Assembly (NCBI RefSeq): GCF_963676685.1
Contig: NC_092345.1
Span: forward strand, 107,570,001 to 107,634,000
Reading direction: 5' to 3'
Length of the DNA stretch: 64,000 nucleotides
From: Mytilus edulis
Lineage: Eukaryota
Shown: positions 10,859 through 36,100 of the stretch, in pieces
Layout of the letters: every line of letters begins with the position of its first letter
How positions within the stretch are numbered: position 1 is the first letter of the stretch
Program-made: the position numbers and the translations under genes
Notes under the pieces: generated by a model
Seen by the model: only the letters and a program-made list of their open reading frames with translations
What the model was told of the DNA's origin: nothing
The model's database searches: none

Positions 10859-10988
10859 ATGGCAGGTAACTTAGATCCAGACCTGATATATAGTACAACT
10901 GAAGAGAAGACATTCAGTAATCAGGATAAATTACCTCCCTTACCTGTACCAGACCTTAGTCATACATTGGACAGATATTTAGATTCTG
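10859..10988 (+). CDS. CROT: CROT coding exon 1
   Basis: MAGNLDPDLIYSTTEEKTFSNQDKLPPLPVPDLSHTLDRYLDS; AG at 10856-57, GTGAG at 10989. Confidence 0.9.
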
Positions 10989-13900
10989 GTGAGTTATAGC
11001 TACGATTATCTCCCTTACCTGTATTCGACCTTAGTCGTAGACTGGACAGATATTTAGATGCTGGTGAGTTATAGCTAGGATTATCTCCTTTACCTGTACC
11101 AGACCTAAGTCATACATTGGATAGATATTTAGATTCTGGTGAGTTATAGCTAGGATTATCTCCCTTACCTGTACCAGATCTTAGTCATGCACTGGACATA
11201 TATTTAGGTTCTGGTGAGTTATAGCTAGGATTATCTCCCTTACCTGTACCAGATCTTAGTCATGCACTGGACATATATTTAGGTTCTGGTGAGTTATAGC
11301 TAGGATTATCTCCCTTACCTGTACCAGACCTAAGTCATACATTGGATAGATATTTAGATTCTGGTGAGTTATAGCTAGGATTATCTCCCTTACCTGTACC
11401 AGATCTTAGTCATGCACTGGACATATATTTAGATTCTGGTGAGTTATAGCTACGATTACCTCCCTTACCTGTATTAGACCTTAGTCATACACTGGACAGA
11501 TATTTAGATGCTGGTGAGTTATAGCTAGGATTATCTCCCTTACCTGTACCAGATCTTAGTCATACACTGGATATATAGATATTTAGATTTTGGTGAGTTA
11601 AAGCTAAGTTTATCTCCCTTACCTGTACCAGTTCTTAGGCATACACTGGTTAGATATTTAGATGCTGGGTAATTAGCTAAGATTATCTCCCTTAGATTCT
11701 GGCGACTTAGTAATTAGGTTTCCCCATCATATATTTGACAGTCATAATATAGTTGTTATCCTGATCGGACGTCCCCATTTGATGAGGGGCCTAAAAGATA
11801 ACCATTGACTCAAGCCTAAGATTGTGATATTATAGTTACTGTTATATGGAAAGATGTAACAATAAGATTTAAAATGCTTTGACTGCAACTTCTGCAAGAC
11901 TAATATATAGAGATTAATACATGGCCTTTTCCATATCAGCCTGGGTATCATCCTGAGACCCCATATCAGCCCGAGACGGAGTCGAGGTGCTGATATGGGT
12001 CTCAGGATGATACCCAGGCTGATATGGAAAAGGCCATGTATTAATCGCTTTATCATATACTTCCGACAATAGTTTTATGTAAGGCAAATAAACTAATGCA
12101 ATAACTAAAACAGTCAAACATTTTATAAAGAAAATTAAAATTATGAATCAAATATACTATAGTTGTCCAACAACAGCATTATACTCCTTATATATTTATG
12201 GTAACATTTCCTATAGAGGCATTTTGAAACATTGAAAATTTGGAAGAGTTTTGCGATCATTACTACTCCATGTTTGTTGTACTATAAAATGATTCATAAT
12301 TGTCAATGGCATTTGTTAGCAAGTATTAAACTATCCCCACAAAAGTTCCCGTAAATTTTGACGTCGTCATAAAAAAACATCTGACGTCACAATGGAAAAG
12401 TAAACAACCGATACCGGAAACATTGGAAGTAACTTGCACGAGAGGCACTGATATGGGTTTTTTGCACGAGAGGCACTTGATATGGGTTATCAGCCCGGGT
12501 GGGAAGATATGGCTTGTGCACTTCCGCCCATTACGCATATGCAAAAGCTATCATATTAATGCTAAGTATATGATAAAGATATTTATTATCTGATGGGTTA
12601 TTCCCCCTCCATGTACATATGTGATTTGAGTAGACATTTTTTATCTGATGGGTTATTCCCCCTGCATGTATGTGATTTGAGTAGACATTTTTTATCTGAT
12701 GGGTTATTCCCCCTCCATGTATGTGATTTTAGTAGATATTTATTATCTGATGGGTTATTCCCCCTGCATGTATATGTGATTTGAGTAGTCATTTATTATC
12801 TGATGGGTTATTCCCCCTGCATGATCTGAGTAAACTTACTAGACAGATGTTTTTGTTCTGCTCTTTGGTTGGGTTGTTGCCTCTTTGACACATTCCCCAT
12901 TTACATTCTCTATTTTATTAACATTCTATAATTATACCTGACCCTTGGTGCGTTAATAGCAAATAATTTTCTTTTTCAGTAAAACCCCACGTAACACCAG
13001 AGCAATATAGACAGACAGAATTTATTGTTCAACAGTTTGCATCTGGTGTTGGCAAACAATTGCACAAGGAGCTTTTAGAAAAGGCTAAACACTCTAGAAA
13101 TTGGGTATGTAAAAGGCCTATTATATTAGGATTTACACTTAAACTTTTTGATTTATAACAGTTTATGTAAAATATCAATATTTATTTCATCAGTTTTTGG
13201 ATCTTCCCTGAATTCTTGTCCTGAGTTTTAAAATTACATTCATCATGTACAATTTATAAAAACTGTCTTATTGTAACTGATGTTAAGAGAAGGTAAATTT
13301 GGACCAGGCCTATAAGAAGATGTGACATAATTGCCAATGAGACATTATCCTTGTTCATTTTGTATCACCTATTATCGAAATAATACCCATTAATTATTTG
13401 TTTTTTTCCTCCCCACCCATATTTTGTTCTTTGCCTTACTACAGCTTTATTTTACTGCTTGGGCATGACAAGACTCTATAGTAAGAAATATCTGTAAAGA
13501 ACTTCATCATCAATACTAAGGTTACTTAATTATTAACTTTATTGTTTTATGGACGAATTGGATATAAATGGCTGATTATTTAATTCTTCAGTTGGAAAGT
13601 TGGTGGGATTCAGCTGCTTACTTAGAGGGTCGATACCCAGTGGCACCTCATGTTAACTTTGGTGGACCTGGACCATATATTCACCATGTCTACCCACCAA
13701 AGGCAGGCACACAAATTCACAGAGCTGGCATGATTTTGCATTCATCACTAAAATTCTGGCAGTTGGTTAGACAGTATGTTAATTTCACAATTATAAAAGA
13801 ATTAACCTTTTAATACTGAAATCTTGTAAAATGAATATAAAAAACAACATGCAAGCATAAGTATGTAACATGATTTAAGAAACAGATCTTAATCGATAAT

Positions 13901-16900
13901 AAAAATTTTAAAAAGATGTTAAAAAATATTTTCATATATACTAAAATTTGTATGGCCCACCTAGTGGCAGCATGTTCTTTTTTGTCTGTGTTCATCAGTC
14001 CTTCTGTTCATCTCTCTGTCTTTACCGCTTTAGTTTGAAGGTTTTTGGTGGTCAAGGTAGTTTTTGACCCCAATTTCACAGTCCAGTGAACATAAAAAAT
14101 GATCAGTGTACTATGGACACATTCTTGTTTTTCTGAGGAGTTTAGTGATAGCTGTTGATGTATCGGGGTATTTTGTTTTTTTCTGAGAAGTTGGGTGATA
14201 GTGGTTGATGTACTGGTGGTATTCTGTATTTTTTTCCCTGAGAAGTTGGGTTCAAGTGGTTGATGTACTGACATGAACATTCTGTATTTAAAATTCTAAG
14301 GAGTCAGGTGCTAGTGGTTGATGTTTTCTGTATTTTTCTTAGGAGTCAGGTCCTAGTGGTTTATGTATTGGGGATATTCTATATTAAACATTCTGAGAAG
14401 TCAGGTGCTAGTGGTTGATGTATTGGGAATATTCTGTATTAAAAATTCTGAGGCGTCAGGTGCTAGTGGTTGATGTATTCTATATTTTTTTTATGATTCC
14501 TGTTAATATATTATTCTTTTTTTCAGAGAAAAATTAAGAATAGATAAAGACAGTAAAGGAAACAAAATGTGTATGAACCAATTCCTCAGAGCATACAGTA
14601 CCTGTAGAATACCAGGGGTTCATGTTGATCATTTGTCCTTCAACTTTAAAACAGGTATGTCACGGGAGAAACTCTGAACTACATCACCTGAGCATTAATG
14701 GCATGCAGATGTCAGCTAAAATGATTTTTCAACTCTTAAACAGATCTGCAAGGAAAAGAAACTATATACAGAGCATAGGAGTAGAATTTCATATAAATCA
14801 AGCTGTTTGTTTTCTCTTTTGAATTATTTCATATTTTGTATTAAATACAGGAAAAGGTATTAAACTCAAATGTTGATGGTTATTGTACTGTTTATAAACT
14901 TCATTTGAGTTACTTTGAGTAAATTCAGCTTCTTGTATCCTTAAATTTTGAACTCAATTATGATAATTGTCAAAAAGTTATAATTAGATATCTACTTTTA
15001 GAATCACAAGGAGACACCCCTAGACATGCTGTTCTGATGTACAAGGAGAGGATATTTACATTTGATTGTGTTGATGAAGATTATGACATTTTAACTCCTC
15101 CAGAAATAAGTCAACAGTTACAAAAAATCAAGGATTTCTGCAAGACACATCCACAGGGTCAAGGTGTAGGGGCACTAACAGCACTCGAAAGAACTCCCTG
15201 GGCAGAGGTAAGGAAAGAATTTACCCCAGGACTAGGAGTTTTAGCCCTTTAATAATGAATTTTACCCAACTTTTGCAAATTAGGTAGAGAGTACCGGTAA
15301 ACAGTACAAAAATTAATCAGCTCAACAAGATTAACAAAAAAGATAATGTTATTCCTGAATGATATTTTAGTCTTTAATGTTGGAGAGTAACGGTAGTTGA
15401 AAATGCTTACAGATCCATGTGAGGGACACCAGCTCCTAAGTACGTCTACTATAGGTGTTGTTTTATACTTTACAGATGAGGAGCAGATTGATGGCTTTAC
15501 ATCCAGAAAATTTTCATTATCTTAAGACCATTGAGACTGCAATATGTGTTGTAACTTTAGATGATGCCAACCCTACTAGTGAAGTTGAAGTAAGTTCCCT
15601 GCTTGATCCTTAGTTTATCAATTGATCTGCTTTAAACAATTGTTGAGGGATAATCTCTCAGTAATTGTTTAATATTCACTGGTATTAAAGAGATAATAGT
15701 AACTGCAATTACGATTATCCCAATATGGCGACGGTAGATATAGGTAAAATCTTTACACTCGCTTTTCTTAAATGTAGCATGTTTTTGTCAATAGTTACTC
15801 AGCTGCAAAGTTTATCTATACCATTACATCATATTTGAATCGTAACGGTGCACTGGAATTGTCTAAGAGCTGTGAAAATAGCCGTTGAAAAATTCAGGAT
15901 GATAATCGTAACTCTATGGTATTTTTCTTCTTTGATAATCGTAATTTTCTTTATATGATAATAGTAACTGAAACATAATAAATGTGTCTTTCAGCATTTC
16001 AATGGTATTTTGTGTGTAAAAAATGTAAATGCCCTGTTAAACGATGACATTAACGCATATAAAAATAAATGAAGAAACTTACAGGTTAATATCTAGGATA
16101 AATTTACCTATATATCTCTAATTGATGAGAAAAAGGATGGATTAGCTATATCCCATATTCCAAAAGTGCAATCCTTTCAATTCATTGCTCAAAATGAAAG
16201 TCACGTATACCACATTTTCATATGTCAAAAAAGATATATGCCTGTTTCATTGATTTCAGGAAGGCATTTGATACTATTAATAGAGATGCCCTCTTTTACA
16301 AATTGTCTTATTACAACATAGATGGTCCCTTTTTTTAGTATAATGAAAGATATGTATAAAGAGGTTTTGTACTTGGTAAAGATCTCGGAAGGTATCACTG
16401 ATTTTTTTAATTCCTCAGTTGGGGTAAAACAAGGGTGTATTTTAAGCCCTACATTATTTTCTTTATATATTAATGATTTACCATCTATTTTTGACTCAAC
16501 ATGTGAACCACCCAAGTTAAATGATAATGATATATCATATCTGTTATACGCTGATGATTTAGTTCTTATCAAGAAATTCAGCCGTCCATATTTTTCCTTT
16601 GGATTCACTTTTTTCTATTTTATACTGATATATGATTTTAAAAATTAAATTCAAATGTTTTGATCAAATTCCCATGTATTTTAGGACGTTTCTTTAAACA
16701 GTGTGGATGGTAAAGGATCTAGAATAGTTACCAGTTTATTGTTACTATTGTTTATTGTCACTTTTGTTTTTTGTTACTTTTGTTTATTGTTACTTTTGTT
16801 TATTGTTACTTTTATTTTTTGTTTTTATTAGCCTTACCTATAGTCTTACGAAGCATTTGACAGACGAAAAAAAACCCACAAATATGTATATTGATAAATT

Positions 16901-19900
16901 ACATCAAAGGGCCAAACATGTAGATTATCACAGTCGGAACTGGTTTAATTACAAAGATTTTTATAGATTTTAAAACAAATATTTTGTGCTTCAGAAAAAT
17001 GCATGAAAATTAGGAAAGGCTAATTTATATTTTCATTTAATAGAAAAGTACTAATCATATGGCAAGTATGCAAATACAAAAATGTTCCTTGTTTAGTACC
17101 TTCAATATTTTTCTCTACAATATCTTCCATGCATATGTATGCAGCATACTTTTCATATACCGAGTATTTATGAATTTTTAATAAGTTTGTTTCTAATTTT
17201 GCGGAATGTGCGTTATTTTATTCTCATCTTTGCAGTCATTCTTTGAATAAGTATTTCTTGTAAGAAAATTTAAAGCTACATCAATTTTATTTTTTGATTT
17301 TCGGGCTTTTGGCCAAACTATAAAAGAACACAAATCCATGTTTGTCAATGAACTCCACGTTACTTAATTTCATAATACACAAAGAATCCCATTTAGGGCC
17401 AAACATTCTCTAGTCTTATATAGCATTAAATGTTTTAAGGATGTCATATTATCATAATTCAAAATTGAATTTGTGTTGTTTATAGTTTATATCTGAGATA
17501 CTGAAATTTCAGTGACAGTCATGAAGTAGCTAATATGAATAAAAAGATGTGGTATGTTTGCCAATGAGACAACTTTCCACAAGAGACCAACATGACTCAG
17601 AAATTAACAAATATAGGTCACCGTACGGTCTTCAACAATGAACAAAGCCCATACCGCATAGTCAGCTATAAAAGAAATGACACTGTAAAACACTTTTCAA
17701 AGTTATCCCTTGTTCATCATAACTTTTAAGTTGTGATATCATCCATGAAAAATGATCGAAGTGACATGAAAACTGTAGCCACTAATTTCTCGTCAAACGG
17801 TTTTTGACGAATACTAAATGTCTTTCCTACTTCGTTATGGCATAATAGGGTATGTTCTAGAATTAAATCAGCAGTGGCTTCCCGGGGGCAGAAATAGCAC
17901 ATATAACCACCTACAATAAAATAATTTAAACAATATTAACTATATTTACTATTTACTTCAGGATAAATTATTTTTTGTTTACTGTCTTAATCAGAAATCT
18001 GATGTAAGGTGACACATGCGTGTCGCCTGACAATTATTGTCATGTATCATAATTTCCATCGCTCATTCACATATTTTGTGGCATACCTAGTTTAATAAAT
18101 TTCTGTATATCAACAAAGTTCGTGTTTTCCCATTTCCAAATTTCTTGAAGCTTGTTCACCCTTCCAATTTTATAATATACTAGCATGTAGCTGTTTTCAT
18201 AAGAACAATTAATTATATATGCATAAAAAGAAATGTCATAAGATGTTGGGACGTTTCGTAAATAATTCATCGCCGTAATTTCATAATATGCTATCAGATA
18301 TACGTTTTTAGTGTCAATATCAATAAAACAGTTTCCAGTTACGATTATTTTTTTTATTTTTGAATACCATAATTACGATTATCTTTTTTCCGAGTTATGA
18401 TTATCATCCCGAATTTTTCAACGGCTATTTTCAAAGCGCTTAGACAATTCCAGTGCACCGTTACGATTCAAATATGATGAAATGGTATAGATAAACCTTG
18501 CAGCTGAGTAACTATTGACAAAAACATGCTACAATTAAGAAAAATGAGTGTAAAGATTTTACCTATATCTACCGTCGCCATATTGGGATAATCGTAATTG
18601 CAGTTACGATTATCTCTTTAATACCAGTGATATTCATAACTCTGACACAAGTTGAAGAATGACATGTGAATATAAAGTGTAGAACAGCATTTTATCAGAA
18701 ATCTTTTCTTCCATCAGTTATTTGATCCTGAAATACTTTTCCGGACAATATCAGATTAAGTCCATCTAAGTTTACACTTAAACATTACCTTAATCAAAAT
18801 GTAAATAATTAAATCTAATTATTTTTTTTTAAATAATCTACTCGTGTTTAAACAGTTCAACAATTTTTAGTAGATTCAAAGTTATTTGGCAAATGGCGTC
18901 TTTTACGGTTATGATAGTGATTTGGGTTAGACAGTCTTGACAAAGCCCTGGAAACACACACCAAAGACTGTAGCTGGTTCCTTACTGTCTATGTTTTGTA
19001 AGCAGGCATAAATGGTTTTGTATTCAATTTGTCTTAAATTTATGACCACTCAGCCCACAGCCATCTAGCACTAGGCAAACACTCTCAATAATTATTACAA
19101 GGTGCATTACTTTATGAGACTCTCACCACTTAAAAAAAATAGAAATATAACAAACTCGAAGAAATGTTTTTAATCATAAGGTTTTTCTTCTTCTCATAGT
19201 ATATTCCTCCTTTCTTGGAGCACCAGTGTCACACAGAGACAAAACTCACACCAATAGAAAAAAAATACTACAAACTAGCACCACTCAAGAAACAATTTAA
19301 ATCATCTGAGAGTTCTAGATTGTCTTCTCTTAGTTGTTTCCTCCATTCTTGGAGTACCTTTAGCATACAGAGACAGAACTTAACTCAAACTTAAAAAAAA
19401 AAAATGCTACAAACTAGCACCACAGAGAAATGTTTTAAAAATCAGTGTTCCATGTTGTCTTCCTTTTCTCTGAGTTATTTCCTCCTTTCTAGGAGTGTAT
19501 CACAGACCGAATCTACTAATAGGACAGTTTGAGAAACACGAACCCAAGCTGTGTATCATCATAAACATTTCAAGTAGTATTCAAGCTCATACTGATTTTT
19601 CTAATGAGATTGAATGTTTGTTTGTTACATTGATTCCTTTAGTGTTTTTATTGATCATGTAGAATATATATCATTTCAGTTGTTTCAAAAATCATTGGGT
19701 GGAACACCGATTGACAAATGGTTTGATAAATCACTCAACCTTATCTTTTTTGAAAATGGAACAGCAGGTTCCAACTGTGATGTAAGTATCTAACATGTAT
19801 CCTACAGGTATCCAAAGTACCCTGTATGTATGCTGGGTATCCACAGAAATTGTACAGGTATCTAACAGACATCCAAGGTATCCTTCAAGTATCCTGTAGG

Positions 19901-22900
19901 TATCCTTGCTATCCACAGATATCCTACATGTATCCAAAACATATCCAAGGTATCCTACATGTATCCAAAGTATCGTGTATGTATCCTGGGTATCCACAGG
20001 TATCTTACAGGTATCTTACAGGTATTCGTAGATATTCAAGGTATCCTTCAGGTATCCTACATGTATCTAACACATATCCAAGGTATCCTACATGTATTCT
20101 ATACATATCCTACAGGTATCCAAAGTTATAGAACAGTTATCCACAGGTATCCTACATGTACATTGTATCTAACACATATTCAAGGTATCCTAAATGTATT
20201 CTACACATATCCTACATGTATTCTATACATATCATACATGTATTCTATCCATATCCTACCTGTATCCTATACATATATCCTGCATGTATCCTATACACAT
20301 ATCCTACTGGTATCCTATACATGTATTCCACAGTTTTCAGGTGCACATGTTCATTTATGATGTGAAATTTCAAAATTACTTGCTAAATTACAGTTGTTAA
20401 CCCTGATCTCATTGTTTCTCTGAACAGAAAATTTAAAGTCATGAATCCAGTAAATTCTCAGGGATAAAGTTTTAAGGCAATGTGTCTAACCAATTCAAAT
20501 TAACACTTTGTACACATGTTAATTGTGATTTGAAGATTAATATTTTGTATACCAAATTATTGTTTTGACCCTGATTTCACAGTTCTGACACTTAAACATG
20601 TAAATGTGATAGTCATGATAGTTGTAGCAGGACATGATGTCCCATGGACACCTTCTCTTGTTTATCTTCAGCAGATTCATATTTTTATTTGTTTTTATGC
20701 GTAATCATAATGTATTGCACAAAAGCAAAAACAATTACTATGAATTCAAATCACATAACAAATTCAAGTTCTGTGACTACAGTTATTCTGTGTCAGAAAC
20801 CTATTATGTGTCAAATATTTAACTACAATCCAAATTCATACCTGTATAAAGTGCGAATATTGTGTCCATGTTTTTACCCAACTGTTCAGGGTTTGACCTC
20901 TGCAGTCATATCCAGCTGTGCTCAGCGAAGCAATTAATTGTTTATTGCTCACAATCACTGATTGTATAGTTTATTTATGTTTTATTTATAGCACAAATCT
21001 GCTGATGGTATTGTCAATATCAGGGCCGTAACTAGCCTCTTTTAATAGTGAGGCAAAATATTTTTAGCCGAGCGTAGCGAGGCGAAAAATTTTGGGCGAG
21101 GCGTCTGGGGGCCTTTGCTGAGAAAAATAACGCAAAATCGTGCATTCTGAGCGTTTCCAAGACTCTTCTTGCATTGAAACGGCTTAATTAATTTTTAAAT
21201 ATTTTTTTGGACAATCAGGTCCCAAAGCAAAAACAAAGATTCATTGTAATTTAAGACGTTTAGGTATTAGAGACAACATTAAGGACCGATATGTAGGATA
21301 AAGCAAAAATCCTAATTCTCATAATTATTAATAGCGTATCCGTCTGTCTGTTATTGTCTTGTATTGTGATAAGACTTTGGTGATTTTTTTTATGACTAGA
21401 TTTAAATATAGTGGCATTGCAGTATTATACTTTAAGTACTAGTACTACTTAAGTCCACACTAGGGACCATCTTCACCTTGTTTTACGATCTTTTACGGTA
21501 TTAATGCTTCTTTAAAAGTATTGTTGAAGACAATCCGGCAACTATCAAGATGAAGAGCAGGAACACAAACTTTGACCATTGATCATTTGTATTTTTCTAT
21601 GCATTGATTTTGTGTGAGATTATGTCCCCATACTCCTTTATTGTCTATTAAAGGGTCTCAACACGACTTAATGCAAGTTTAACCTTTCAATGTAAAAGGT
21701 CATATATGGCAACACCTTGTTTTTTTTCTTCAAATTATTTGATACCGGGAAATATGTGACCTTACTTTAATTCAAACCATGTCAGCTATCTAGTTTTATT
21801 TACAATAAAACAAACTGTTTTGTATTCTTTGATATCAATTTCAATTATCCATGCAGAAAGGACAATTGTATTTTGTGTCCACTGAGTAGCATCGCATGTT
21901 CTTAAAATATATTTCTCGCACAATTCTGGACATCGGTGGACATGCAACATTGCAAAACCACGTTTACAAATGAAAATCAACGCTCAGACTATAGTCATAA
22001 AGTAGGACAATAAACGAACAAAAGACAAACACGGAACACAGAAGTACAAACAATAGACCATCAACTCTGAAAACTAAAAGGAAAATAGAAACATGGATAA
22101 CGAAAAACATCCAGGGGATACACCAGAGAGTGAAGAGAACTTGCTTCTTTCAAGACTCTTTCTGTGAAAACAATTTGATATGAAAACAACCTTTTTTTTT
22201 TTTTTTTTTTTTTTACATGAGGCATTTGCCTCATTTGCCTCAATGTAGTTACGGCCCTGAATATATAGATATAGATTGTACCACTGCATCGAGTGCAATA
22301 TGATATTTATCCACTCCAGACAGTTAAATTTTCAAATTTAAAACGCGAGGCTTGCCCGAGCGTTTTAAATATTTAAAATTTAACTGTTGAGAGTAGATAA
22401 ATATCATATTACACAAGATTTGGTGGTGGAATCTGTTTCTCTAATGATTTTCTAACATTATGCAGGCAAACTTATTCCTTCTTTTCGAATGATCTGCAAA
22501 AAGATGTATTCTTTCTATGTGACATCATCAGACATGGTCGCTTTTTTTCATGTCGTCACAATAGGAAATTCAGAGGAAAGCAAGAAAATTCAACGACATA
22601 ATCAGATTTTAACCAATGAAGTACTGAGAGTTGATTAAATTTCTTTTATACAATGGGTGCAGAAAGGGATAAATTGACGAAGAATTAGAGAAATCTATTT
22701 ATAGAACACACCTGCTGATGTTATAGTTGATATGTTTCTATTTATAGCAACATCATCTAATGGTAAAGTTGATATATTTCTATTTATAGCACTCACCTGC
22801 TGATGGTATGGTCTATATTGTATTTAAGTCTTATGTTGAACTGCTTGTATGCAAAACTAAAGGACATTGGCAGGTAATTGTTTTATGTTTCTATTTATAG

Positions 22901-25900
22901 CACACACCAGTGGATGCAATGGTTCTTGTAGCCAGTACATATTATAATGACCTGTTTATTGCTAAAAATAAAGGAAAATGGCAGGTATGGTTTGATTTGG
23001 CTCCTATCAATCCTGTTTGAGAATCACTTTATAAATTAAAGGTTAAATGAAGTTTACCATGCATAGTTTTGCAATGTAGACACTATATCAAATAACCAAT
23101 TACACACCAAGAGGCTGATATGTCAGAGACAGGGTAACAATGGTTTTTATAAACACTGATATTTAACAATGGACATTGCAAAGGAGTTTAAAGAATTTTT
23201 TTTACTTATTTGGATTTTGGAGTAAACCTTGAGGAGTAAAGGGATGATAGGAGAATATGGAAAATATTTGTGCCCTTCAAAGAAACAGAAAATAACTTTT
23301 AAAAGACCTCTAGGGAAAAACTTTATCAGGCAATTTGAGAAGGTACCTTCTACAGGCCTGAAACTGATAATTTACATTTTATAACCAGTGAGACTGATTG
23401 TTTGGTAGCATATGTTTACCTTCTACAGGCCTGAAACTGATAATTTACATTTTATAACCAGTGAGACTGATTGTTTGGTAGCATATATATGTTTACCTTC
23501 GACGGGCCTGAAACTGATAATTTACATTTTATAACCAGTGAGACTGATTGTTTGGTAGCAATGTTTACCTTCGACAGGCCTGAAACTGATAATTTACATT
23601 TTATAACCAGTGAGACTGATTGTTTGGTAGCATATGTTTACCTTCGACAGGCCTGAAACTGATAATTTACATTTTATAACCAGTGAGACTGATTGTTTGG
23701 TAGCAATGTTTACCTTCGACAGGCCGAAACTAATAATTTACATTTTATAACCATTGAGACTGATTGTTTGGTAGCAATGTTTACCTTCGACAGGCCTGAA
23801 ACTGATAATTTACATTTTATAACCAGTGAGACTGATTGTTTGGTAGCAATGTTTACCTTCGACAGGCCGAAACTGATAATTTACATTTTATAACCAGTGA
23901 GACTTGCTATACATGTTTTCTCTTACAGGGAAGTACTACAAAAAGAGATTTACAAGAACCTATACAACTTATATTCCATGTAGATGATGTTATTAGAGAT
24001 AATATAATCAAAGCTAAAATTGACCATAAACAAGTAGTAAGTATTGTTGTGTAAGATGAACGGGCTATGAAAACTCACTAAGATGAGAAAAAAATATATT
24101 GCCTGAGTGCTACTTTTTAAATTTTATTCTATTCAGAAACTGAGGATCCAAATTTTGTTGTTTAAAGTTGATAGGAGGATAATGAAGGTTCTATAGATGC
24201 TCTATAATCAGGGAGTTGTTATAAGGGGATAAGGGGGTTGAGAATATGCTCTATAATAAAGGAGTTGCTATAGTAAGGTAGTTGAGAAAATGCTTTCTTA
24301 TAATGGAGTTGTTATGATAAAAATGTTGAGAAAATGCTCTGTAATAAGGGAGTTGAGAATAGGCTCTAAAATAGTGGAGTTGTTATGATAAGAGAGTCAA
24401 GTAGATGCTCTATAATAAGGGAGTATTTTTTTTATAAATATTTTAAAGAATGAGCACAGATTTTAATTTAATATTTCTATTTTAGTCAGACAATCTGCAG
24501 TGAAGCACAGATTTTAATTTGATATTTCTATTTTAGTCAGACAATCTGCAGTGGAGCACAGATTTTAATTTGATATTTCTATTTTAGTCAGACAGATTTT
24601 AATTTGATATTTCTTTTTTAGTCCGACAATCTGCAGTGTAATGCAAAGTTTTATACAAAATATGGAAAGACATATTTACGCAGAAATAAACTACATCCAG
24701 ATACACATGTACAACTAGCATTACAGTACGCTTACTACAAACTACACAAAAAGTAAGTATAGGCATAAACAACATCCAGATACACATGTACAACTGGCGG
24801 TACACTTACTATAAAATACACAAAAAGTAAGTATAGGCATAAACTACATCCAGATACACATGTACAACTGGCATTACAGTATGCTTACTACAAAATACAC
24901 AAAAAGTAAGTATAGGCATAAACAACATCCAGATACACATGTACAACTAGCATTACAGTACGCTTACTACAAAATACACAAAAAGTAAGTATAGGCATAA
25001 ACTACATCCAGCACACATGTACAACTGGTGGTACACTTACTATAAAATACACAAAAAGTAAGTGTAGACATAAAATACATCTAAACATACTTGCACCACT
25101 AGAATTACAGTACACTTACTATAAAATACACAAAAATTAAATTCATGGCCCATGTAATTTTGTAGTTTTTTATATAAATGCAAAGTTTCAATTCTATTTT
25201 TCAATGGGAACCAATTTCTTAAATATCTTCTTTTGTTGATAACAAAACTTACATTTCAGACCTGGGCCAACATATGAAACAGCAACAATAAGACGATTTT
25301 ATAATGGACGTACAGAGACAATGAGGAGTTGTACAACTGAAGCTTTGGAATGGAGTAAATCTATGTGCAATAAAAATACCTCCGTAAGTCATCTGTACCG
25401 GTATATAAAAATCTATATGACTTCATTGTAATGGATTTTTAAAAATGATAAGTTTATTTGATACTTATATAAAACTTTTATCTTTAAGACATTTAATATA
25501 AAATCAATAGCCAGTAAAGCAGGGGAGACATTTCAGCTTGTGCACTCTTGCTTGACATTTTACAGTGTTTTTTTTTATAGATATTTGAATGTATTATCTT
25601 ATTCACTTGAGTTGTCCTTCTAGCATCGACTAAAGTGTTGATAAATCCCTTGTATACTCCATCAATTATCTCCCTTTGGACAACTATTTTCATTCTTTTT
25701 TTCACTGGGAGCTTTACATTCAACATTAGGCATTTAGGTTTTTGAACAGTCAGTACTTTTTAATCATTTGTTCAAAAATATCATTATAACTGACAACATT
25801 ATTTTAAAAACCTGTTTGAAAACAAACTTCTATGGAGGAGCATGTAGAGAACAGCTGATAATAGGTCAAATAAAACTGTAAAAATTAAAGATGTTTAATA

Positions 25901-28654
25901 TAGTTTTGAAAATATTTTTTTCCAGGAACAGACAAAATATAATTTATATCTGAAAGCATCAAATAAACATAACAGATTGATGAGTGAAGCACAGGAAGTC
26001 AAAGGTAAGATTTACTTTATAGGTGCTAGATTTATTATCAAATTTTTAAAATCATGGAAATTAACTACTGTAAGATATCTTCATTAAAGATTTTGATTGT
26101 TGATATGCATGGCAAACATGTTCATCCGGCAACGTCTTTGCAAGCCAAGGATGACAATCCAGTCCCCACCTCTCCACCCTTGATGATATAATAGAGAATT
26201 TAGGATATACATGGTAAGGGTTTTATGGATTACAGTTGTAACTGGCTGTGTCCTATCATAAAGCACCTTTGAGAAGATAACTTGTAAATGTAAAAACGTA
26301 AATAAACAAGTTCCATGTGCTGATTGTGCAACAAATCTTAATGACAAATTTTAAAGGTCTTAATCAATCTTATAGTAAGTGTACTGTAATGCCAGTTTTA
26401 CATGAGTGCTGGATGTAGTTTATGCCTTTACTTAATTTTTTGTTCTTGAACAGAATGCTGACCCAAATCTTGGAATGTCAACATACATTTTGAGTCCTGC
26501 TTTAGGAAATTTGTGAACACTATATAGACACAATTGTTTTTACACCTCCACACTGAAGAGATTTCAAGTGCTGCCATTTGTGAAGAATTGTGTAGTCAAC
26601 ATGGGAGTGACTTATGTCTGCCTTTAGAAGGCTCAGCATTGTAATAAAAAAATGTTGGCCTAATCAGCCAAGGGTGGAGAGGAGGGGACAGGATCGTAAT
26701 CCTTGCCTATCCAAGATGATCAGGCACATCAGGAAATTCTTAACGAATTTCAAAAATGACATTTAAATCCTGGAATGTATTGTTTGTATTTTTTGTTTGA
26801 TTATGATTTAAGGATTTACATATTTAGCTCAAATGAAATTAAATCTTGATGTCTTAGTCTATCCTACCTTTTTTATTACATTATGAAAGATAATTACTTA
26901 AAATTTGTTTTCCTCTGATAAATGTCTATCCTAGCCTAGGTGTAATGTATCTAGCTTCTAGATGGTATGTTAAAATTTAATTTTCTGATTTGGTCCATTA
27001 ACGACTTACAATATTATATTAAGAACACCTTGTAAGCATAGTGAAACATTCTGTTCCTACTTTTTCTGTGACAAATATATGTGTAATTTTTAATTTTTTT
27101 TAATTTTAGGTTGTGATCGACATTTACTAGGGCTATACCTGTTAGGAAGAGAACAAGGACTACCTGTTCCACAACTATTTACTGATCCTGCTTTTACTAA
27201 AAGGTATTTTGTAAGACTTCCATCTATATGACTGCATTTACATCTGTTACAGTTAACAGTATGCAAAAAAGGCAGACATTTCAAAGTTCTGTCTGTATTT
27301 GATTTTATACAATGAATGAGACTTCAATAACATCTAAAAAAAAAAAATGCTCTAAACATGCTAAATGTAGATGTAAACCAAGAATATTTTTGGTGTAAAG
27401 AGTATCTAAGTTTTACAAAAAAACAAAACAAAGAGATGTGATCGCAACATTTAAAGTGTACCTAGATTCAGTGGTGGCAGTGGTAACTTTGCCTTGTCTA
27501 CAAGCTTTGTAGGATACACAACAGTTTATGGTGGATTGGTTCTAATGCCTACATCTGTCTGTGTCCTCACTTATTTTTGTTTATTTTCAGTGGTGACAGT
27601 GGTAACTTTGCCTTGTCTACAAGCTTTGTAGGATACACAACAGTTTATGGTGGATTGGTTCTAATGCCTACATCTGTCTGTGTCCTCACTTATTTTTGTT
27701 TATTTTCAGTGGTGGCAGTGGTAACTTTGCCTTGTCTACAAGCTTTGTAGGATACACAACAGTTTATGGTAGAGTGGTTCTAATGCCTACATCTGTCTGT
27801 GTCCTCACTTATTTTTGTTCATTTTCAGTGGTGGGGGTGGTAACTTTACCTTGTCTACAAGTTTTGTAGGATATACAACAGTTTATGGTAAAATGGTTCT
27901 AATGCCTACATCTGTGTGTGTCCTCACTTATTTTATTTATTTTCAGTGGTGGCGGTGGTAACTTTGCCTTGTCTACAAGCTTTGTAGGATATACAACAGT
28001 TTATGGTGGAGTGGCTCCAATGGTGGAAAATGGTTATGGTTGTTTTTATCACATGGAACCCAAACAGTATGTATACATCAAGCTTAAGTGTTAATTCTAA
28101 GGTTATGGAAAGGATTGATATTGGTGGTGAATACCACTATATTATTTCATGGTACTCTGTTAATACTGAGTTTGTGAGTTCAAATCTATTCATGTGGCAG
28201 ATATGCTCAACTCCAATCTTTATTAACCATGATTGTTTGATTTGTTTTCCTGTCGAAGCCTGGAACTGTGGATTCCTCCACCAAAAAAACTTGAACGCCA
28301 CGAAATATCCAATAATGCTAAAAGTGGCTTAACATCAAACAATTAATCTTGTTTACTATATAGCATGTTTAAACTCAACTTCATTATTCCATTCTAGTTC
28401 TACATTTAATTACATATCTGATGATTATTTACAGAATAGCGGCATAAAATCCATCTGATTATATCATAGAAAGCATTCTAATACCAAATGAAATCACATA
28501 TCTGATGATTATTTACAGAATAGCTGCTGTTGTAACAACATGGAGAAGTTGTAAAGAAACAGATTCTGTTGTGTTTATGAATGAAGTTCACCAATGTTTA
28601 ACAGAGATGGGAAACATGATAGAAAAAGGCCAACAAACACATGCTAAATTATAA
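10859..28654 (+). CDS. CROT: Peroxisomal carnitine O-octanoyltransferase, whole spliced gene (15 coding exons, 620 aa)
   Basis: GT-AG exons with consistent phases: 10859-10988, 12980-13104, 13592-13773, 14527-14654, 15002-15207, 15476-15589, 19680-19781, 22901-22984 (or 22790-22873), 23929-24036, 24622-24752, 25260-25383, 25926-26004, 27110-27203, 27947-28066, 28519-28654; total 1863 nt. Motifs: LPPLPVPDL, NWLESWW, KWFDKSL, NCDHTPVDAM, TYETATIRRFYNGRTETMRS, GCDRHLLGL, SGGGGNFALSTS, C-terminal AKL. Confidence 0.93.
10930..11705 (+). repeat. 75-bp tandem repeat of the CROT exon-1 3' end plus donor site (~10 units)
   Basis: Donor GT recurs at 10989, 11064, 11139, 11214, 11289, 11364, 11439, 11514, 11593 and 11669. 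Confidence 0.92.
11912..12578. mobile_element. Non-autonomous element with 135-bp terminal hairpin and asymmetric inverted repeat
   Basis: Near-perfect hairpin 11912-12046; CTTTATCATATACTT (12048-62) is mirrored by AAGTATATGATAAAG (12564-78). Confidence 0.65.
12580..12825. repeat. ~51-bp minisatellite (~5 units)
   Basis: TTATCTGATGGGTTATTCCCCCTGCATGTATGTGATTTGAGTAGACAT repeated. Confidence 0.85.
12980..13104 (+). CDS. CROT: CROT coding exon 2
   Basis: (V)KPHVTPEQYRQTEFIVQQFASGVGKQLHKELLEKAKHSRNW; ttttcAG acceptor, GTATGT donor. Confidence 0.9.
13592..13773 (+). CDS. CROT: CROT coding exon 3
   Basis: LESWWDSAAYLEGRYPVAPHVNFGGPG..., within ORF 13568-13813. Confidence 0.9.
14135..14490. repeat. 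Degenerate ~55-bp minisatellite upstream of CROT exon 4
   Basis: Recurrent GAGTCAGGTGCTAGTGGTTGATGTA..TTCTGTATT. Confidence 0.7.
14527..14654 (+). CDS. CROT: CROT coding exon 4
   Basis: EKLRIDKDSKGNKMCMNQFLRAYSTCRIPGVHVDHLSFNFKT. Confidence 0.9.
15002..15207 (+). CDS. CROT: CROT coding exon 5
   Basis: SQGDTPRHAVLMYKERIFTF...GVGALTALERTPWAE, then GTAAGG. Confidence 0.9.
15476..15589 (+). CDS. CROT: CROT coding exon 6
   Basis: MRSRLMALHPENFHYLKTIETAICVVTLDDANPTSEVE, then GTAAGT. Confidence 0.88.
15677..18629. mobile_element. Non-autonomous DNA transposon with CAC..GTG termini, ~235-bp TIRs and 5-bp TSD (Transib/RAGL-like signature)
   Basis: ATATT|CACTGGTATTAAAGAGATAAT... and ...ATTATCTCTTTAATACCAGTG|ATATT; long near-perfect TIRs. 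Confidence 0.8.
16226..16570 (+). pseudogene. Non-LTR retrotransposon (LINE) reverse-transcriptase fragment
   Basis: ACFIDFRKAFDTINR...(frameshift near 16330)...GVKQGCILSPTLFSLYINDL...LLYADDLVLI. Confidence 0.88.
19680..19781 (+). CDS. CROT: CROT coding exon 7
   Basis: LFQKSLGGTPIDKWFDKSLNLIFFENGTAGSNCD, then GTAAGT. Confidence 0.9.
19790..20330. repeat. Low-complexity short-period repeat (GTATCCTACAT/GTATCCA..) starting just after the CROT exon-7 donor
   Basis: Many GTATCC/ACATGTAT units; these generate the spurious ORFs at 19731-20400. Confidence 0.85.
21021..22259. mobile_element. Non-autonomous DNA transposon with 14-bp TIRs
   Basis: CAGGGCCGTAACTA ... TAGTTACGGCCCTG, flanked by AATAT on both sides. 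Confidence 0.78.
22270..22693. mobile_element. Long-hairpin non-autonomous element (same architecture as 11912-12578)
   Basis: Hairpin AATATGATATTTATC..ACAGTTAAATTTT / AAAATTTAACTGT..GATAAATATCATATT; TTTCTCTAAT is mirrored by ATTAGAGAAA at the end. Confidence 0.55.
22790..22873 (+). CDS. CROT: CROT alternative catalytic exon 8a (candidate mutually exclusive)
   Basis: 84 nt, phase 0/0, HSPADGMVYIVFKSYVELLVCKTKGHWQ; tatttatAG acceptor and CAG|GTAATT donor. Confidence 0.65.
22901..22984 (+). CDS. CROT: CROT catalytic exon 8b
   Basis: 84 nt, HTPVDAMVLVASTYYNDLFIAKNKGKWQ; closer to the vertebrate CROT HAPFDAM motif; CAG|GTATGG donor. Confidence 0.88.
23345..23903. repeat. ~72-bp minisatellite, 8 units, ending ~25 nt before CROT exon 9
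   Basis: ACCTTCGACAGGCCTGAAACTGATAATTTACATTTTATAACCAGTGAGACTGATTGTTTGGTAGCAATGTTT units. Confidence 0.92.
23929..24036 (+). CDS. CROT: CROT coding exon 9
   Basis: GSTTKRDLQEPIQLIFHVDDVIRDNIIKAKIDHKQV, then GTAAGT. Confidence 0.88.
24452..24637 (+). repeat. 51-bp tandem duplication of the CROT exon-10 acceptor
   Basis: ttttAG|TCAGACA copies with AG ending at 24485, 24536 and 24587, before the true AG at 24621. Confidence 0.88.
24622..24752 (+). CDS. CROT: CROT coding exon 10
   Basis: SDNLQCNAKFYTKYGKTYLRRNKLHPDTHVQLALQYAYYKLHK. Confidence 0.9.
24688..25140 (+). repeat. ~79-bp tandem duplication of the CROT exon-10 3' end plus donor
   Basis: CACAAAAA|GTAAGT recurs at 24753, 24827, 24906, 24985 and 25058; the last copy has lost its GT. 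Confidence 0.9.
25260..25383 (+). CDS. CROT: CROT coding exon 11
   Basis: PGPTYETATIRRFYNGRTETMRSCTTEALEWSKSM. Confidence 0.92.
25926..26004 (+). CDS. CROT: CROT coding exon 12
   Basis: EQTKYNLYLKASNKHNRLMSEAQEVK(G). Confidence 0.87.
27110..27203 (+). CDS. CROT: CROT coding exon 13
   Basis: CDRHLLGLYLLGREQGLPVPQLFTDPAFTK. Confidence 0.9.
27465..28010 (+). repeat. 119-bp tandem duplication of the CROT exon-14 acceptor plus first ~65 nt of exon
   Basis: ttcAG|TGGTG..GGTAACTTT copies with AG ending at 27471, 27590, 27709 and 27828, before the true AG at 27946. Confidence 0.92.
27947..28066 (+). CDS. CROT: CROT coding exon 14
   Basis: GGGGNFALSTSFVGYTTVYGGVAPMVENGYGCFYHMEPK. Confidence 0.9.
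28519..28654 (+). CDS. CROT: CROT final coding exon with PTS1
   Basis: IAAVVTTWRSCKETDSVVFMNEVHQCLTEMGNMIEKGQQTHAKL-stop. Confidence 0.88.
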
Positions 28655-32170: not shown

Positions 32171-32647
32171 TCTATCTATCAATCAATGGGGATCTCGGTC
32201 CTTGACACATTTCTGTCACAATTTTCTCAACAACTACCAAACAATTTGACACATTTTCTATTTAACTCCTTCTGTGTTTTTCTTTCTATTTCTTAAATAC
32301 TGATATCTTTATAATATGAACCAAGATATGGTTAACCACTTTTATAATCCTGGTACCTTTGATAACTATTTACACCACTGGGTCGATGCCATTGCTGGTG
32401 GACGTTTCGTCCCCAAGGGTATCACCATCCCAGTAGTCAACACTTCGGTGTTGACATGAATATCATTAATGTGGTCATTTTATACAAACTTCCTGTTTAC
32501 AAAACTTTGAGTTTTTTAAAAAACTAAGGATTTTCTTATACCAGGCATAGATTACCTTAGCCGTATTTGGCACAACTTTTTGGAATTTTGGATCCTAATT
32601 GCTCTTCAACATTTAACTTGTTTGGCTTAATTAATATTTTGATATGA

Positions 32648-32691
32648 GCTTCACTGATGAGTCTTATGTAGACGAAACGCGCGTCTGGCGT
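32648..32691 (+). ncRNA. Type I hammerhead ribozyme (first of 11 copies), predicted cleavage after 32685
   Basis: Core CUGAUGA and GAAA; stem II GUCU/AGAC; minimal stem III with palindromic ACGCGCGU; GUC triplet; stem I GCUUCA/UGGCGU. Confidence 0.9.
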
Positions 32692-33085
32692 AATAAATTA
32701 TAATCCTGGTACCTTTGATAACTATTTACACCACTGGGTTGATGCCACTGCTGGTGGACGTTTCGTCCCCGAGGGTATCACCAGCCCAGTAGTCAACACT
32801 TCGGTGTTGACATGAATATCATTAATGTTGTCATTTTATACAAACTTCCTGTTTACAAAACTTTGAGTTTTTTTAAAAACTAAGGATTTTCTTATACCAG
32901 GCATAGATTACCTTAGCCGTATTTGGCACAACTTTTTGGAATTTTGGATCCTAATTGCTCTTCAACATTTTACTTGTTTGGCTTAATTGATATTTTGATA
33001 TGAGCTTCACTGATGAGTCTTATGTAGACGAAACGCGCGTCTGGCGTAATAAATTATAATCCTGGTACCTTTGATAACTATTTAC

Positions 33086-33149
33086 ACCACTGGGTCGATG
33101 CCACTGCTGGTGGACGTTTCGTCCCCGAGGGTATCACCAGCCCAGTAGT
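33086..33149 (-). ncRNA. Degenerate hammerhead-like motif on the antisense strand of each retrozyme unit (third unit shown)
   Basis: Reverse complement: ACUACUGGG CUGGUGA UACCCUCGGGGAC GAAA CGUCCACCAGCAGUGGCAUCGA CCCAGUGGU. Confidence 0.5.
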
Positions 33150-36100
33150 CAACACTTCGGTGTTGACATGAATATCATTAATGTGGTCATTTTATACAAA
33201 CTTCCTGTTTACAAAACTTTGAGTTTTTTTAAAAACTAAGGATTTTCTTATACCAGGCATAGATTACCTTAGCCGTATTTGGCACAACTTTTTGGAATTT
33301 TGGATCCTAATTGCTCTTCAACATTTTACTTGTTTGGCTTAATTGATATTTTGATATGAGCTTCACTGATGAGTCTTATGTAGACGAAACGCGCGTCTGG
33401 CGTAATAAATTATAATCCTGGTATCTTTGATAACTATTTACACCACTGGGTCGATGCCACTGCTGGTGGACGTTTCGTCCCCGAGGGTGTCACCAGCCCA
33501 GTAGTCAACACTTCGGTGTTGACATGAATATCATTAATGTGGTCATTTTATACAAACTTCCTGTTTACAAAACTTTGAGTTTTTTTAAAAACTAAGGATT
33601 TTCTTATACCAGGCATAGATTACCTTACCCGTATTTGGCACAACTTTTTGGAATTTTGGATCCTAATTGCTTTTCAACATTTTACTTGTTTGGCTTAATT
33701 AATATTTTGATATGAGCTTCACTGATGAGTCTTATGTAGACGAAACGCGCGTCTGGCGTAATAAATTATAATCCTGGTATCTTTGATAACTATTTACACC
33801 ACTGGGTCGATGCCACTGCTGGTGGACGTTTCGTCCCCGAGGGTATCACCAGCCCAGTAGTCAACACTTCGGTGTTGACATGAATATCATTAATGTTGTC
33901 ATTTTATACAAACTTCCTGTTTACAAAACTTTGAGTTTTTTTAAAAACTAAGGATTTTCTTATACCAGGCATAGATTACCTTAGCCGTATTTGGCACAAC
34001 TTTTTGGAATTTTGGATCCTAATTGCTCTTCAACATTTTACTTGTTTGGCTTAATTGATATTTTGATATGAGCTTCACTGATGAGTCTTATGTAGACGAA
34101 ACGCGCGTCTGGCGTAATAAATTATAATCCTGGTACCTTTGATAACTATTTACACCACTGGGTCGATGCCACTGCTGGTGGACGTTTCGTCCCCGAGGGT
34201 ATCACCAGCCCAGTAGTCAACACTTCGGTGTTGACATGAATATCATTAATGTGGTCATTTTATACAAACTTCCTGTTTACAAAACTTTGAGTTTTTTTAA
34301 AAACTAAGGATTTTCTTATACCAGGCATAGATTACCTTAGCCGTATTTGGCACAACTTTTTGGAATTTTGGATCCTAATTGCTCTTCAACATTTTACTTG
34401 TTTGGCTTAATTGATATTTTGATATGAGCTTCACTGATGAGTCTTATGTAGACGAAACGCGCGTCTGGCGTAATAAATTATAATCCTGGTATCTTTGATA
34501 ACTATTTACACCACTGGGTCGATGCCACTGCTGGTGGACGTTTCGTCCCCGAGGGTGTCACCAGCCCAGTAGTCAACACTTCGGTGTTGACATGAATATC
34601 ATTAATGTGGTCATTTTATACAAACTTCCTGTTTACAAAACTTTGAGTTTTTTTAAAAACTAAGGATTTTCTTATACCAGGCATAGATTACCTTACCCGT
34701 ATTTGGCACAACTTTTTGGAATTTTGGATCCTAATTGCTTTTCAACATTTTACTTGTTTGGCTTAATTAATATTTTGATATGAGCTTCACTGATGAGTCT
34801 TATGTAGACGAAACGCGCGTCTGGCGTAATAAATTATAATCCTGGTATCTTTGATAACTATTTACACCACTGGGTCGATGCCACTGCTGGTGGACGTTTC
34901 GTCCCCGAGGGTATCACCAGCCCAGTAGTCAACACTTCGGTGTTGACATGAATATCATTAATGTGGTCATTTTATACAAACTTCCTGTTTACAAAACTTT
35001 GAGTTTTTTTAAAAACTAAGGATTTTCTTATACCAGGCATAGATTACCTTAGCCGTATTTGGCACAACTTTTTGGAATTTTGGATCCTAATTGCTATTCA
35101 ACATTTTACTTGTTTGGCTTAATTGATATTTTGATATGAGCTTCACTGATGAGTCTTATGTAGACGAAACGCGCGTCTGGCGTAATAAATTATAATCCTG
35201 GTATCTTTGATAACTATTTACACCACTGGGTCGATGCCACTGCTGGTGGACGTTTCGTCCCCGAGGGTATCACCAGCCCAGTAGTCAACACTTCGGTGTT
35301 GACATGAATATCATTAATGTGGTCATTTTATACAAACATCCTGTTTACAAAACTTTGAGTTTTTTGAAAAACTAAGGATTTTCTTATACCAGGCATAGAT
35401 TACCTTAGCCGTATTTGGCACAACTTTTTGGAATTTTGGATCCTAATTGCTTTTCAACATTTTACTTGTTTGGCTTAATTAATATTTTGATATGAGCTTC
35501 ACTGATGAGTCTTATGTAGACGAAACGCGCGTCTGGCGTAATAAATTATAATCCTGGTACCTTTGATAACTATTTACACCACTGGGTCGATGCCACTGCT
35601 GGTGGACGTTTCGTCCCCGAGGGTATCACCATCCCAGTAGTCAACACTTCGGTGTTGACATGAATATCATTAATGTGGTCATTTTATACAAACTTCCTGT
35701 TTACAAAACTTTTGAGTTTTTTTAAAAACTAAGGATTTTCTTATACCAGGCATAGATTACCTTACCCGTATTTGGCACAACTTTTTGGAATTTTGGATCC
35801 TAATTGCTCTTCAACATTTTACTTGTTTGGCTTAATTGATATTTTGATATGAGCTTCACTGATGAGTCTTATGTAGACGAAACGCGCGTCTGGCGTAATA
35901 AATTATAATCCTGGTACCTTTGATAACTATTTACACCACTGGGTCGATGCCACTGCTGGTGGACGTTTCGTCCCCGAGGGTATCACCAGCCCAGTAGTCA
36001 ACACTTCGGTGTTGACATGAATATCATTAATGTGGTCATTTTATACAAACTTCCTGTTTACAAATCTTTGAGTTTTTTGAAAAACTAAGGATTTTCTTAT

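What the first reader, a model, noticed from the sequence alone, without database searches (positions are those of the whole stretch)
22790..22984. Two alternative active-site exons in CROT: candidate mutually exclusive swap of the catalytic-His segment
Seen: two tandem 84-nt phase-0 exons, HSPADGMVYIVFKSYVELLVCKTKGHWQ and HTPVDAMVLVASTYYNDLFIAKNKGKWQ. Each has an intact AG and CAG|GT. They are identical at only 12 of 28 aa yet have no indels or stops, keep His, Pro, Asp, Met and the KG-WQ end, and show several conservative changes. The spacer is 27 nt (22874-22900), too short for a normal intron, and ends in an in-frame TAG. Known: H-x-x-x-D/E is the catalytic motif of choline/carnitine acyltransferases, and very short spacers enforce mutually exclusive splicing sterically. 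Inference: one gene may encode two enzymes with different active-site linings and acyl-chain specificities. HSPADG looks more like ChAT/CPT-type motifs, HTPVDAM like vertebrate CROT.
Basis: partly seen in the sequence, partly recalled or inferred. Interest (0 to 1): 0.88.

Follow-up and report, generated by a model that had tools for sequence, protein, structure and literature searches.

The report
Alternative catalytic-His exons in mussel CROT
A mussel (Mytilus) peroxisomal carnitine octanoyltransferase gene has two tandem copies of the exon that carries the catalytic histidine and uses one or the other; this is real, but it is an ordinary kind of alternative splicing and both forms are already in RefSeq.

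Summary
The window is Mytilus, almost certainly M. edulis, and the gene is a CROT-like carnitine acyltransferase. Exons 8a (22790-22873) and 8b (22901-22984) are 84-nt phase-0 duplicates, 12/28 aa and 54/84 nt identical, separated by 27 nt ending in an in-frame TAG.

The mutually exclusive reading is supported. In four Mytilus species, RefSeq lists 620-aa isoforms that differ only in this block, carrying either 8a or 8b. An older M. galloprovincialis annotation also uses 8a. 8b is the conserved ancestral-type copy; 8a is divergent and seen only in Mytilus. 8a still keeps every family-conserved position (p about 7e-4), has dN/dS of about 0.5 against 8b, and folds like mouse CROT.

The only consensus branch site for 8b lies 11 nt after the 8a donor, so steric exclusion is the likely mechanism. 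The clearest change is Leu to Tyr at the residue aligned to mouse Met335, which was mutated to Val in PDB entry 1xmd.

This is a new, unpublished member of a known kind. Drosophila CPT1 exons 6A/6B are a precedent in the same family. Venerid clams show a similar swap at another exon of the CROT-like gene.

The parts
10859..28079 (+). CROT-like carnitine O-acyltransferase gene, coding exons as far as mapped; the last coding exon was not mapped
   Evidence: Exon-wise PF00755 hits. tblastn of M. edulis RefSeq isoforms P0244 and P0237 gives 95-100% per exon, the shortfalls lying at alignment ends.
19680..19781 (+). Exon 7, ends ..GSNCD, donor GAT|gtaagt
   Evidence: It aligns to mouse CROT 294-326.
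22694..22778 (+). Two degenerate 42-nt partial copies of the 8a 3' splice site plus about the first 31 nt of 8a. The second copy holds the CTAAT branch-site consensus (A at 22760), 29 nt before the 8a acceptor.
   Evidence: Tandem Repeats Finder row 22694-22808; unit alignment and yTnAy scan.
22790..22873 (+). Exon 8a: divergent alternative exon, catalytic His + loop + helix; donor CAG|gtaatt
   Evidence: It is 100% identical to residues 330-357 of M. edulis isoform X2 (P0237).
22874..22900 (+). 27-nt spacer. It holds the 8a donor, the only yTnAy branch candidate for 8b (A at 22885), the 8b polypyrimidine tract and acceptor, and an in-frame TAG at 22898-22900.
22901..22984 (+). Exon 8b: conserved ancestral-type alternative exon; donor CAG|gtatgg
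   Evidence: It is 100% identical to M. edulis X1 (P0244) and to a 2,093-nt Logan-assembly contig product (P0126).
23929..24036 (+). Exon 9, common to both isoforms

Best explanation
Exons 8a and 8b are a mutually exclusive pair made by an old tandem duplication of a 111-nt unit (exon plus splice signals) in the Mytilus peroxisomal CROT-like gene.

A transcript joins exon 7 either to 8a and then exon 9, or to 8b and then exon 9. This gives two 620-aa enzymes, identical except for 15-16 residues in the block that holds the catalytic His, the HxxxD loop and the following helix (residues 335-351).

Joint inclusion is blocked in two ways. The 27-nt spacer cannot be spliced out: the 8a donor lies 11 nt from the only consensus branch site of 8b, so U1 and U2 binding would clash. 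Retaining the spacer puts a TAG in frame. Skipping both exons would remove the catalytic His.

8b is the ancestral-type version. 8a keeps the catalytic and structural core but changes helix residues, notably Leu to Tyr at the position aligned to mouse CROT Met335. This probably alters kinetics or acyl preference.

Shown: anatomy, conservation, annotated isoforms and foldability. Inferred: the steric mechanism, regulation and any enzymatic difference.
For: - Anatomy.
- Isoforms: isoform pairs in four Mytilus species differ only at residues 331-355. The window encodes both M. edulis forms.
- Independent annotation: the M. galloprovincialis model VDI69976 also carries 8a.
- Conserved columns: across 124 distinct orthologue segments, 8a keeps every highly conserved column (H1, P3, D5, M7, Y15, G25, W27). 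A/G at position 6 and V/I at position 10 stay within the family range. The chance that 16 differences miss those 7 columns is 6.7e-4.
- dN/dS: Nei-Gojobori gives dN 0.41 and dS 0.85 for 8a against 8b.
- Between species: M. edulis and M. californianus differ at 3/28 aa in 8a and 1/28 in 8b, against 43/592 (7.3%) elsewhere in the protein.
- Models: AlphaFold2 models of both isoforms are equally confident, with mean pLDDT 94.0 and 93.5 and the same helix 335-351. The 8a model superposes on mouse CROT at TM 0.95-0.98 and rmsd 1.0 A.
- Pocket residue: PDB holds engineered M335V and C323M CROT mutants, and M335 aligns to exon position 9.
- Steric criterion: a donor-to-branch distance under 50 bp is an accepted criterion for steric exclusion (PMC5740500).
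Against:
- The spliced Logan products seen all carry 8b: P0126, and five from a related species. 8a may therefore be the minor form.
- Nucleotide identity between the copies is nearly even across codon positions (19, 18 and 17 of 28). With 84 nt, dN/dS is imprecise.
- 8a was found only in the Mytilus cluster.
Confidence: 0.85

Rival explanations
1. 8a is spliced in only at noise level, or was propagated between annotations. It yields a tolerated isoform that is not functionally distinct; the working enzyme is the 8b form.
For: All spliced Logan products seen carry 8b. 8a changes faster between species, 3/28 against 1/28 aa. Codon-position identity is flat. This gene is full of young tandem duplications around splice junctions, so duplicated exon material arises easily here.
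Against: 8a is kept open with intact AG and GT. It is modelled in four species, including M. californianus at 7.3% protein divergence. All family-conserved columns are preserved, p about 7e-4. A dS of about 0.85 between the copies implies long co-retention.
Confidence: 0.11
2. 8a is a decaying pseudo-exon and its open frame is chance. Models that include it are prediction artefacts.
For: An open 28-codon frame has P about 0.12 at this base composition. Only 12/28 aa match 8b.
Against: There are no indels and the phase is the same. The 3' splice-site sequence is identical and the donor is good (8 of 9 consensus positions, my count on the sequence printed). A CTAAT branch site sits 29 nt upstream. 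Conserved columns are intact, and the exon is conserved in four species.
Confidence: 0.03

Closest known systems
Drosophila CPT1 (whd) exons 6A/6B
   Same: It belongs to the same enzyme family (choline/carnitine acyltransferases). One gene makes two major isoforms that differ by a single alternative exon, and the 6A form is more active. The exon choice is regulated by SR proteins and by starvation (PMC10879661; it cites Price et al. 2010, J Biol Chem 285:7857).
   Different: It is a different paralogue (mitochondrial CPT1 rather than peroxisomal CROT) and a different phylum. I could not read Price et al., so I do not know whether the fly exon includes the catalytic His. The mechanism of exclusivity was not compared.
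Mutually exclusive exons enforced by donor-branch point proximity (steric interference), e.g. alpha-tropomyosin exons 2/3
   Same: These are tandem homologous exons separated by an intron too short to be spliced. A donor-to-branch distance under 50 bp is the criterion, and it applies to about 9% of human MXE clusters (PMC5740500). The tropomyosin example is from my own knowledge.
   Different: Here the spacer is extreme: 27 nt, with the candidate branch A 11 nt from the donor. It also carries an in-frame stop as a second safeguard.
Venerid clam CROT-like isoforms (Mercenaria mercenaria X1/X2; Ruditapes philippinarum X1/X2/X3)
   Same: These are CROT-like bivalve genes with equal-length RefSeq isoforms that differ only in one exon-sized block of about 60 aa.
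   Different: The block corresponds to exon 3 (residues about 89-165), not the catalytic-His exon, and Ruditapes has three versions. This is an independent duplication. Their genomic DNA was not examined.
Mouse CROT (PDB 1xl7/1xl8, mutants 1xmc C323M and 1xmd M335V)
   Same: It is 45% identical with the same fold, TM 0.95-0.98. Exon 8 aligns to residues 327-354.
   Different: No alternative exon of this kind is known to me in vertebrate CROT. Position 335 is Met in mouse, Leu in 8b and Tyr in 8a.

Membership tests
Choline/carnitine O-acyltransferase family (Pfam PF00755), CROT subfamily | Carn_acyltransf domain over the whole protein | tested here: met
   Exon-wise PF00755 hits in the window cover most of profile positions 16-550. 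All homologues carry PF00755.
Choline/carnitine O-acyltransferase family (Pfam PF00755), CROT subfamily | Catalytic His followed by the conserved acidic residue (H-x-x-x-D/E) | tested here: met
   Both 8a (H-S-P-A-D) and 8b (H-T-P-V-D) have it. His is invariant and Asp is 96% in 124 orthologue segments.
Choline/carnitine O-acyltransferase family (Pfam PF00755), CROT subfamily | Closest to CROT rather than CrAT, CPT or ChAT | tested here: met
   The best solved-structure matches are mouse CROT (E 5e-73, 45% identity), against 26-30% identity for CrAT, ChAT and CPT2. Sources name the orthologues CROT-like.
Choline/carnitine O-acyltransferase family (Pfam PF00755), CROT subfamily | Peroxisomal targeting signal type 1 at the C-terminus | tested here: met
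   Both isoforms end in -AKL, as do oyster, scallop and one of the two mammalian orthologues checked. Localisation itself was not tested.
Choline/carnitine O-acyltransferase family (Pfam PF00755), CROT subfamily | Medium-chain acyl-CoA:carnitine transferase activity | not testable with these tools
   Needs an enzyme assay of both isoforms.
Mutually exclusive exon pair from tandem exon duplication | Adjacent homologous exons of equal length and phase with intact splice sites | tested here: met
Mutually exclusive exon pair from tandem exon duplication | Mature transcripts contain exactly one of the two | tested here: inconclusive
   Met at the level of gene models: RefSeq isoforms in four species, plus one spliced Logan product with 8b.
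Mutually exclusive exon pair from tandem exon duplication | A mechanism that forbids joint inclusion | tested here: met
   At sequence level: a 27-nt spacer, a donor-to-branch distance of 11 nt, and an in-frame TAG; the criterion comes from PMC5740500. Not tested experimentally.
Mutually exclusive exon pair from tandem exon duplication | Both copies conserved under purifying selection across species | tested here: met
   At protein level in four Mytilus species, with conserved-column retention.

The most novel reading that the evidence does not exclude
Mussels make two peroxisomal carnitine acyltransferases with different acyl-group preference or catalytic rate from one gene, by swapping the catalytic-His helix (Leu/Tyr at the Met335-equivalent position). 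Bivalves have repeatedly evolved such exon-swap isoforms of CROT: Mytilus at exon 8, venerid clams at exon 3. Scallops and a chiton have two CROT-like genes on one contig, one with Ala and one with Gly after the conserved acidic residue. This would mean lineage-specific selection for CROT diversity, possibly linked to diet-derived or unusual fatty acids.
Probability: 0.3. Interest if true: 0.55.

Novelty: new member of a known kind. Interest (0 to 1): 0.38.

Why it matters
This would be a clean natural experiment on how the helix after the catalytic His tunes a carnitine acyltransferase. The two isoforms differ at only 15-16 residues, including a position that structural biologists chose to mutate in mouse CROT. 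It also adds a mollusc example, with an unusually short 27-nt spacer, to the small set of mutually exclusive exons enforced by steric hindrance. The same gene family has apparently evolved exon-swap isoforms independently in insects, mussels and clams. It does not reveal a new mechanism, and the isoforms are already present in RefSeq annotation.

Tried and rejected
- **Orthologous genomic DNA.** Spacer length, splice sites and codon-level dN/dS in other Mytilus species or other mytilids therefore could not be checked.
- **Metagenome scan.** The scan with P0237 found no relative.
- **Region search.** A search around 8a (P0237 residues 318-369) returned only the Mytilus cluster.
- **Papers not held.** The CROT structure paper and Price et al. 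2010 are not held. The role of Met335 is therefore from my memory of the Jogl, Hsiao and Tong 2005 abstract, plus the PDB titles.
- **Literature.** No paper on this Mytilus event was found.
- **Third copy.** A third copy of exon 8 in introns 7 and 8 was rejected; the best other score is 16 against 72.
- **Origin from a paralogue.** Origin of 8a from another paralogue was rejected.
- **ChAT/CPT-type motif.** The idea that 8a is ChAT/CPT-type was rejected.
- **Joined model.** Whole-protein work used database proteins.
Full report
**1. Observation.**
- Window 22790-22873 (8a) and 22901-22984 (8b) are open 84-nt blocks. Both are preceded by the same tctatttatag acceptor and followed by CAG|gt.
- The 27 nt between them end in an in-frame TAG.
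- The two share 12/28 residues and 54/84 bases.
- Their ungapped BLOSUM62 score is 72. The next best of about 128,000 84-nt frames in the window scores 29.
- In the 1.37-Gb genome each exon matches only itself and its neighbour.
- There is no third copy in the flanking introns.

**2. The gene.**
- PF00755 (Carn_acyltransf) matches the window exon by exon from about 12976 to 28070 on the + strand.
- Exon 7 ends ..SNCD at 19781 and aligns to mouse CROT 294-326. Exon 8b aligns to mouse CROT 327-354, starting at the His of the family's H-x-x-x-D motif. Exon 9 is 23929-24036.
- A representative search with one exon, followed by a homologue search, led to a 90%-identity cluster of Mytilus proteins that sources name peroxisomal carnitine O-octanoyltransferase-like.
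- The window encodes the M. edulis RefSeq isoforms; mapped exons are 95-100% identical, with shortfalls at alignment ends. The M. edulis contig length of 108.1 Mb fits the window's position at 107.57 Mb.
- Both isoforms end in -AKL, a PTS1-type signal.
- No exon model joined from the window was sent to any search. Whole-protein analyses used database proteins.

**3. Are both exons used?** In M. edulis, M. galloprovincialis, M. trossulus and M. californianus, RefSeq lists 620-aa isoforms that are identical except at residues 331-355. One carries 8b and the other 8a. An independent M. galloprovincialis annotation (VDI69976) also carries 8a.
- The spliced Logan products I could see all carry 8b: P0126, from a 2,093-nt contig, and five from a related species. 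8a may therefore be the minor form.

**4. Is 8a under constraint?**
- I took the same 28-residue block from 124 distinct CROT-like sequences. The columns with at least 86% conservation are H1, P3, D5, M7, Y15, G25 and W27. Column 6 is A or G, and column 10 is V or I.
- 8a keeps a family-allowed residue in every one of these columns.
- If the 16 differences fell at random, the chance of missing the seven conserved columns is 6.7e-4.
- Nei-Gojobori gives dN 0.41 and dS 0.85 between the copies. The ratio of about 0.5 is imprecise on 84 nt, and identity is nearly flat across codon positions.
- Between M. edulis and M. californianus, 8a differs at 3/28 residues and 8b at 1/28. The rest of the protein differs at 43/592, or 7.3%. 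8a therefore evolves at about the gene's average rate.
- 8b is 89% identical to the next mytilid-like species and 57-79% identical to most of the other bivalve orthologues compared. 8a is at most 15/28 identical to anything outside Mytilus.
- 8b is thus the ancestral-type copy and 8a the derived one. The high dS suggests the duplication is much older than the Mytilus species split, but I could not test other mytilid genomes.

**5. Structure.**
- AlphaFold2 models of both isoforms are equally confident, with mean pLDDT 94.0 and 93.5. For residues 331-340 the values are 86 with 8a and 76 with 8b.
- In both models exon 8 is the catalytic His, a short loop and helix 335-351.
- The 8a model superposes on mouse CROT with TM 0.95-0.98 and rmsd 1.0 A.
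- PDB entries 1xmd and 1xmc are M335V and C323M mutants of mouse CROT. Met335 aligns to exon position 9, which is Leu in 8b (the family majority, 60%) and Tyr in 8a (seen in none of the 124).
- From my memory of the abstract of Jogl, Hsiao and Tong (J Biol Chem 2005; not held here), Cys323 and Met335 lie at the bottom of the acyl pocket and Met335 matters for catalysis.
- A bulkier aromatic residue there is the best candidate for a functional difference. This is inference.
- Other residues unique or rare in 8a are F12, K13, S14, E17 and H26.
Ser2 (20%) and Gly6 (27%) are common in invertebrate CROT-like proteins.

**6. Mechanism of exclusivity.**
- The 8a donor G is at 22874.
- Within 60 nt upstream of the 8b acceptor, the only usable yTnAy branch candidate has its A at 22885, 11 nt from that donor. 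A non-consensus CTAAA lies inside 8a.
- A donor-to-branch distance under 50 bp is the accepted criterion for steric interference (PMC5740500).
- The 27-nt spacer therefore cannot act as an intron.
- Retaining the spacer gives a TAG in frame. Nonsense-mediated decay would be expected from established knowledge; this was not tested.
- Skipping both exons keeps the frame but deletes the catalytic His.
- 8a has its own CTAAT branch consensus 29 nt upstream. It lies in a degenerate partial copy of the 8a 5' end.

**7. Context.**
- The gene holds many young tandem arrays that span splice junctions, noted separately by the scan as s1-834796. One array copy is used as an alternative terminal coding exon in M. 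edulis isoform X3.
- The 8a/8b pair looks like an old product of the same duplication habit that became fixed and useful.
- In the same enzyme family, Drosophila CPT1 uses alternative exons 6A/6B with different activity and nutrient-regulated choice (PMC10879661).
- Equal-length RefSeq isoforms of venerid clam CROT-like genes differ in one block of about 60 aa that corresponds to exon 3. There are two versions in Mercenaria and three in Ruditapes. This looks like an independent mutually exclusive cluster.

**8. Verdict.**
- It is a new, unpublished example of a well-known kind of event: mutually exclusive exons from tandem exon duplication, with steric exclusion. It is already captured by RefSeq models.
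- I found no paper describing it.
- The open questions are expression ratios and regulation, the age of the duplication, and whether the isoforms differ enzymatically.

Noticed in passing
window 10930-11694, 22694-22808, 23344-23904, 24453-24594, 24686-25140, 27467-28022: Young tandem arrays (units 42-119 nt, 2.7-10 copies, 79-97% matches) lie on or next to exon-intron junctions of the CROT-like gene. M. edulis RefSeq isoform X3 (588 aa) reads into the first copy of the 119-nt array (27470-27628) as an alternative C-terminus. The scan has this as s1-834796.
   Followed up: partly
G000:C11:11306827-11307772 (L015 328-1273): A 137-nt unit repeated 6.9 times at 97% identity. Each copy matches PF00755 positions 224-262 on the minus strand, inside another carnitine acyltransferase paralogue. 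It is a young array, not a diverged exon cluster.
   Followed up: partly
proteins P0125/P0257 (Mercenaria), P0128/P0259/P0260 (Ruditapes): Equal-length RefSeq isoforms of venerid CROT-like genes differ only in one block of about 60 aa (residues 89-148 and 107-165), equivalent to window exon 13592-13774. This is a likely independent mutually exclusive exon cluster with two and three versions.
   Followed up: partly
proteins P0114/P0120 (Mizuhopecten), P0131/P0147 (Liolophura): A scallop and a chiton each have two CROT-like genes reported with the same longest-contig length, so apparently on one contig. One has Ala and one has Gly after the conserved acidic residue (D/E-A or D/E-G). Gene duplication there parallels the exon duplication in Mytilus.
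   Followed up: no
protein P0123 (Dreissena polymorpha, 923 aa): A RefSeq model fuses protein kinase domains (PF07714, PF00069) to a CROT-like domain. It is probably a merged gene model.
   Followed up: no
window 32343-36285: Other first-reader notes flag a hammerhead retrozyme array downstream of the gene. I did not examine it.
   Followed up: no
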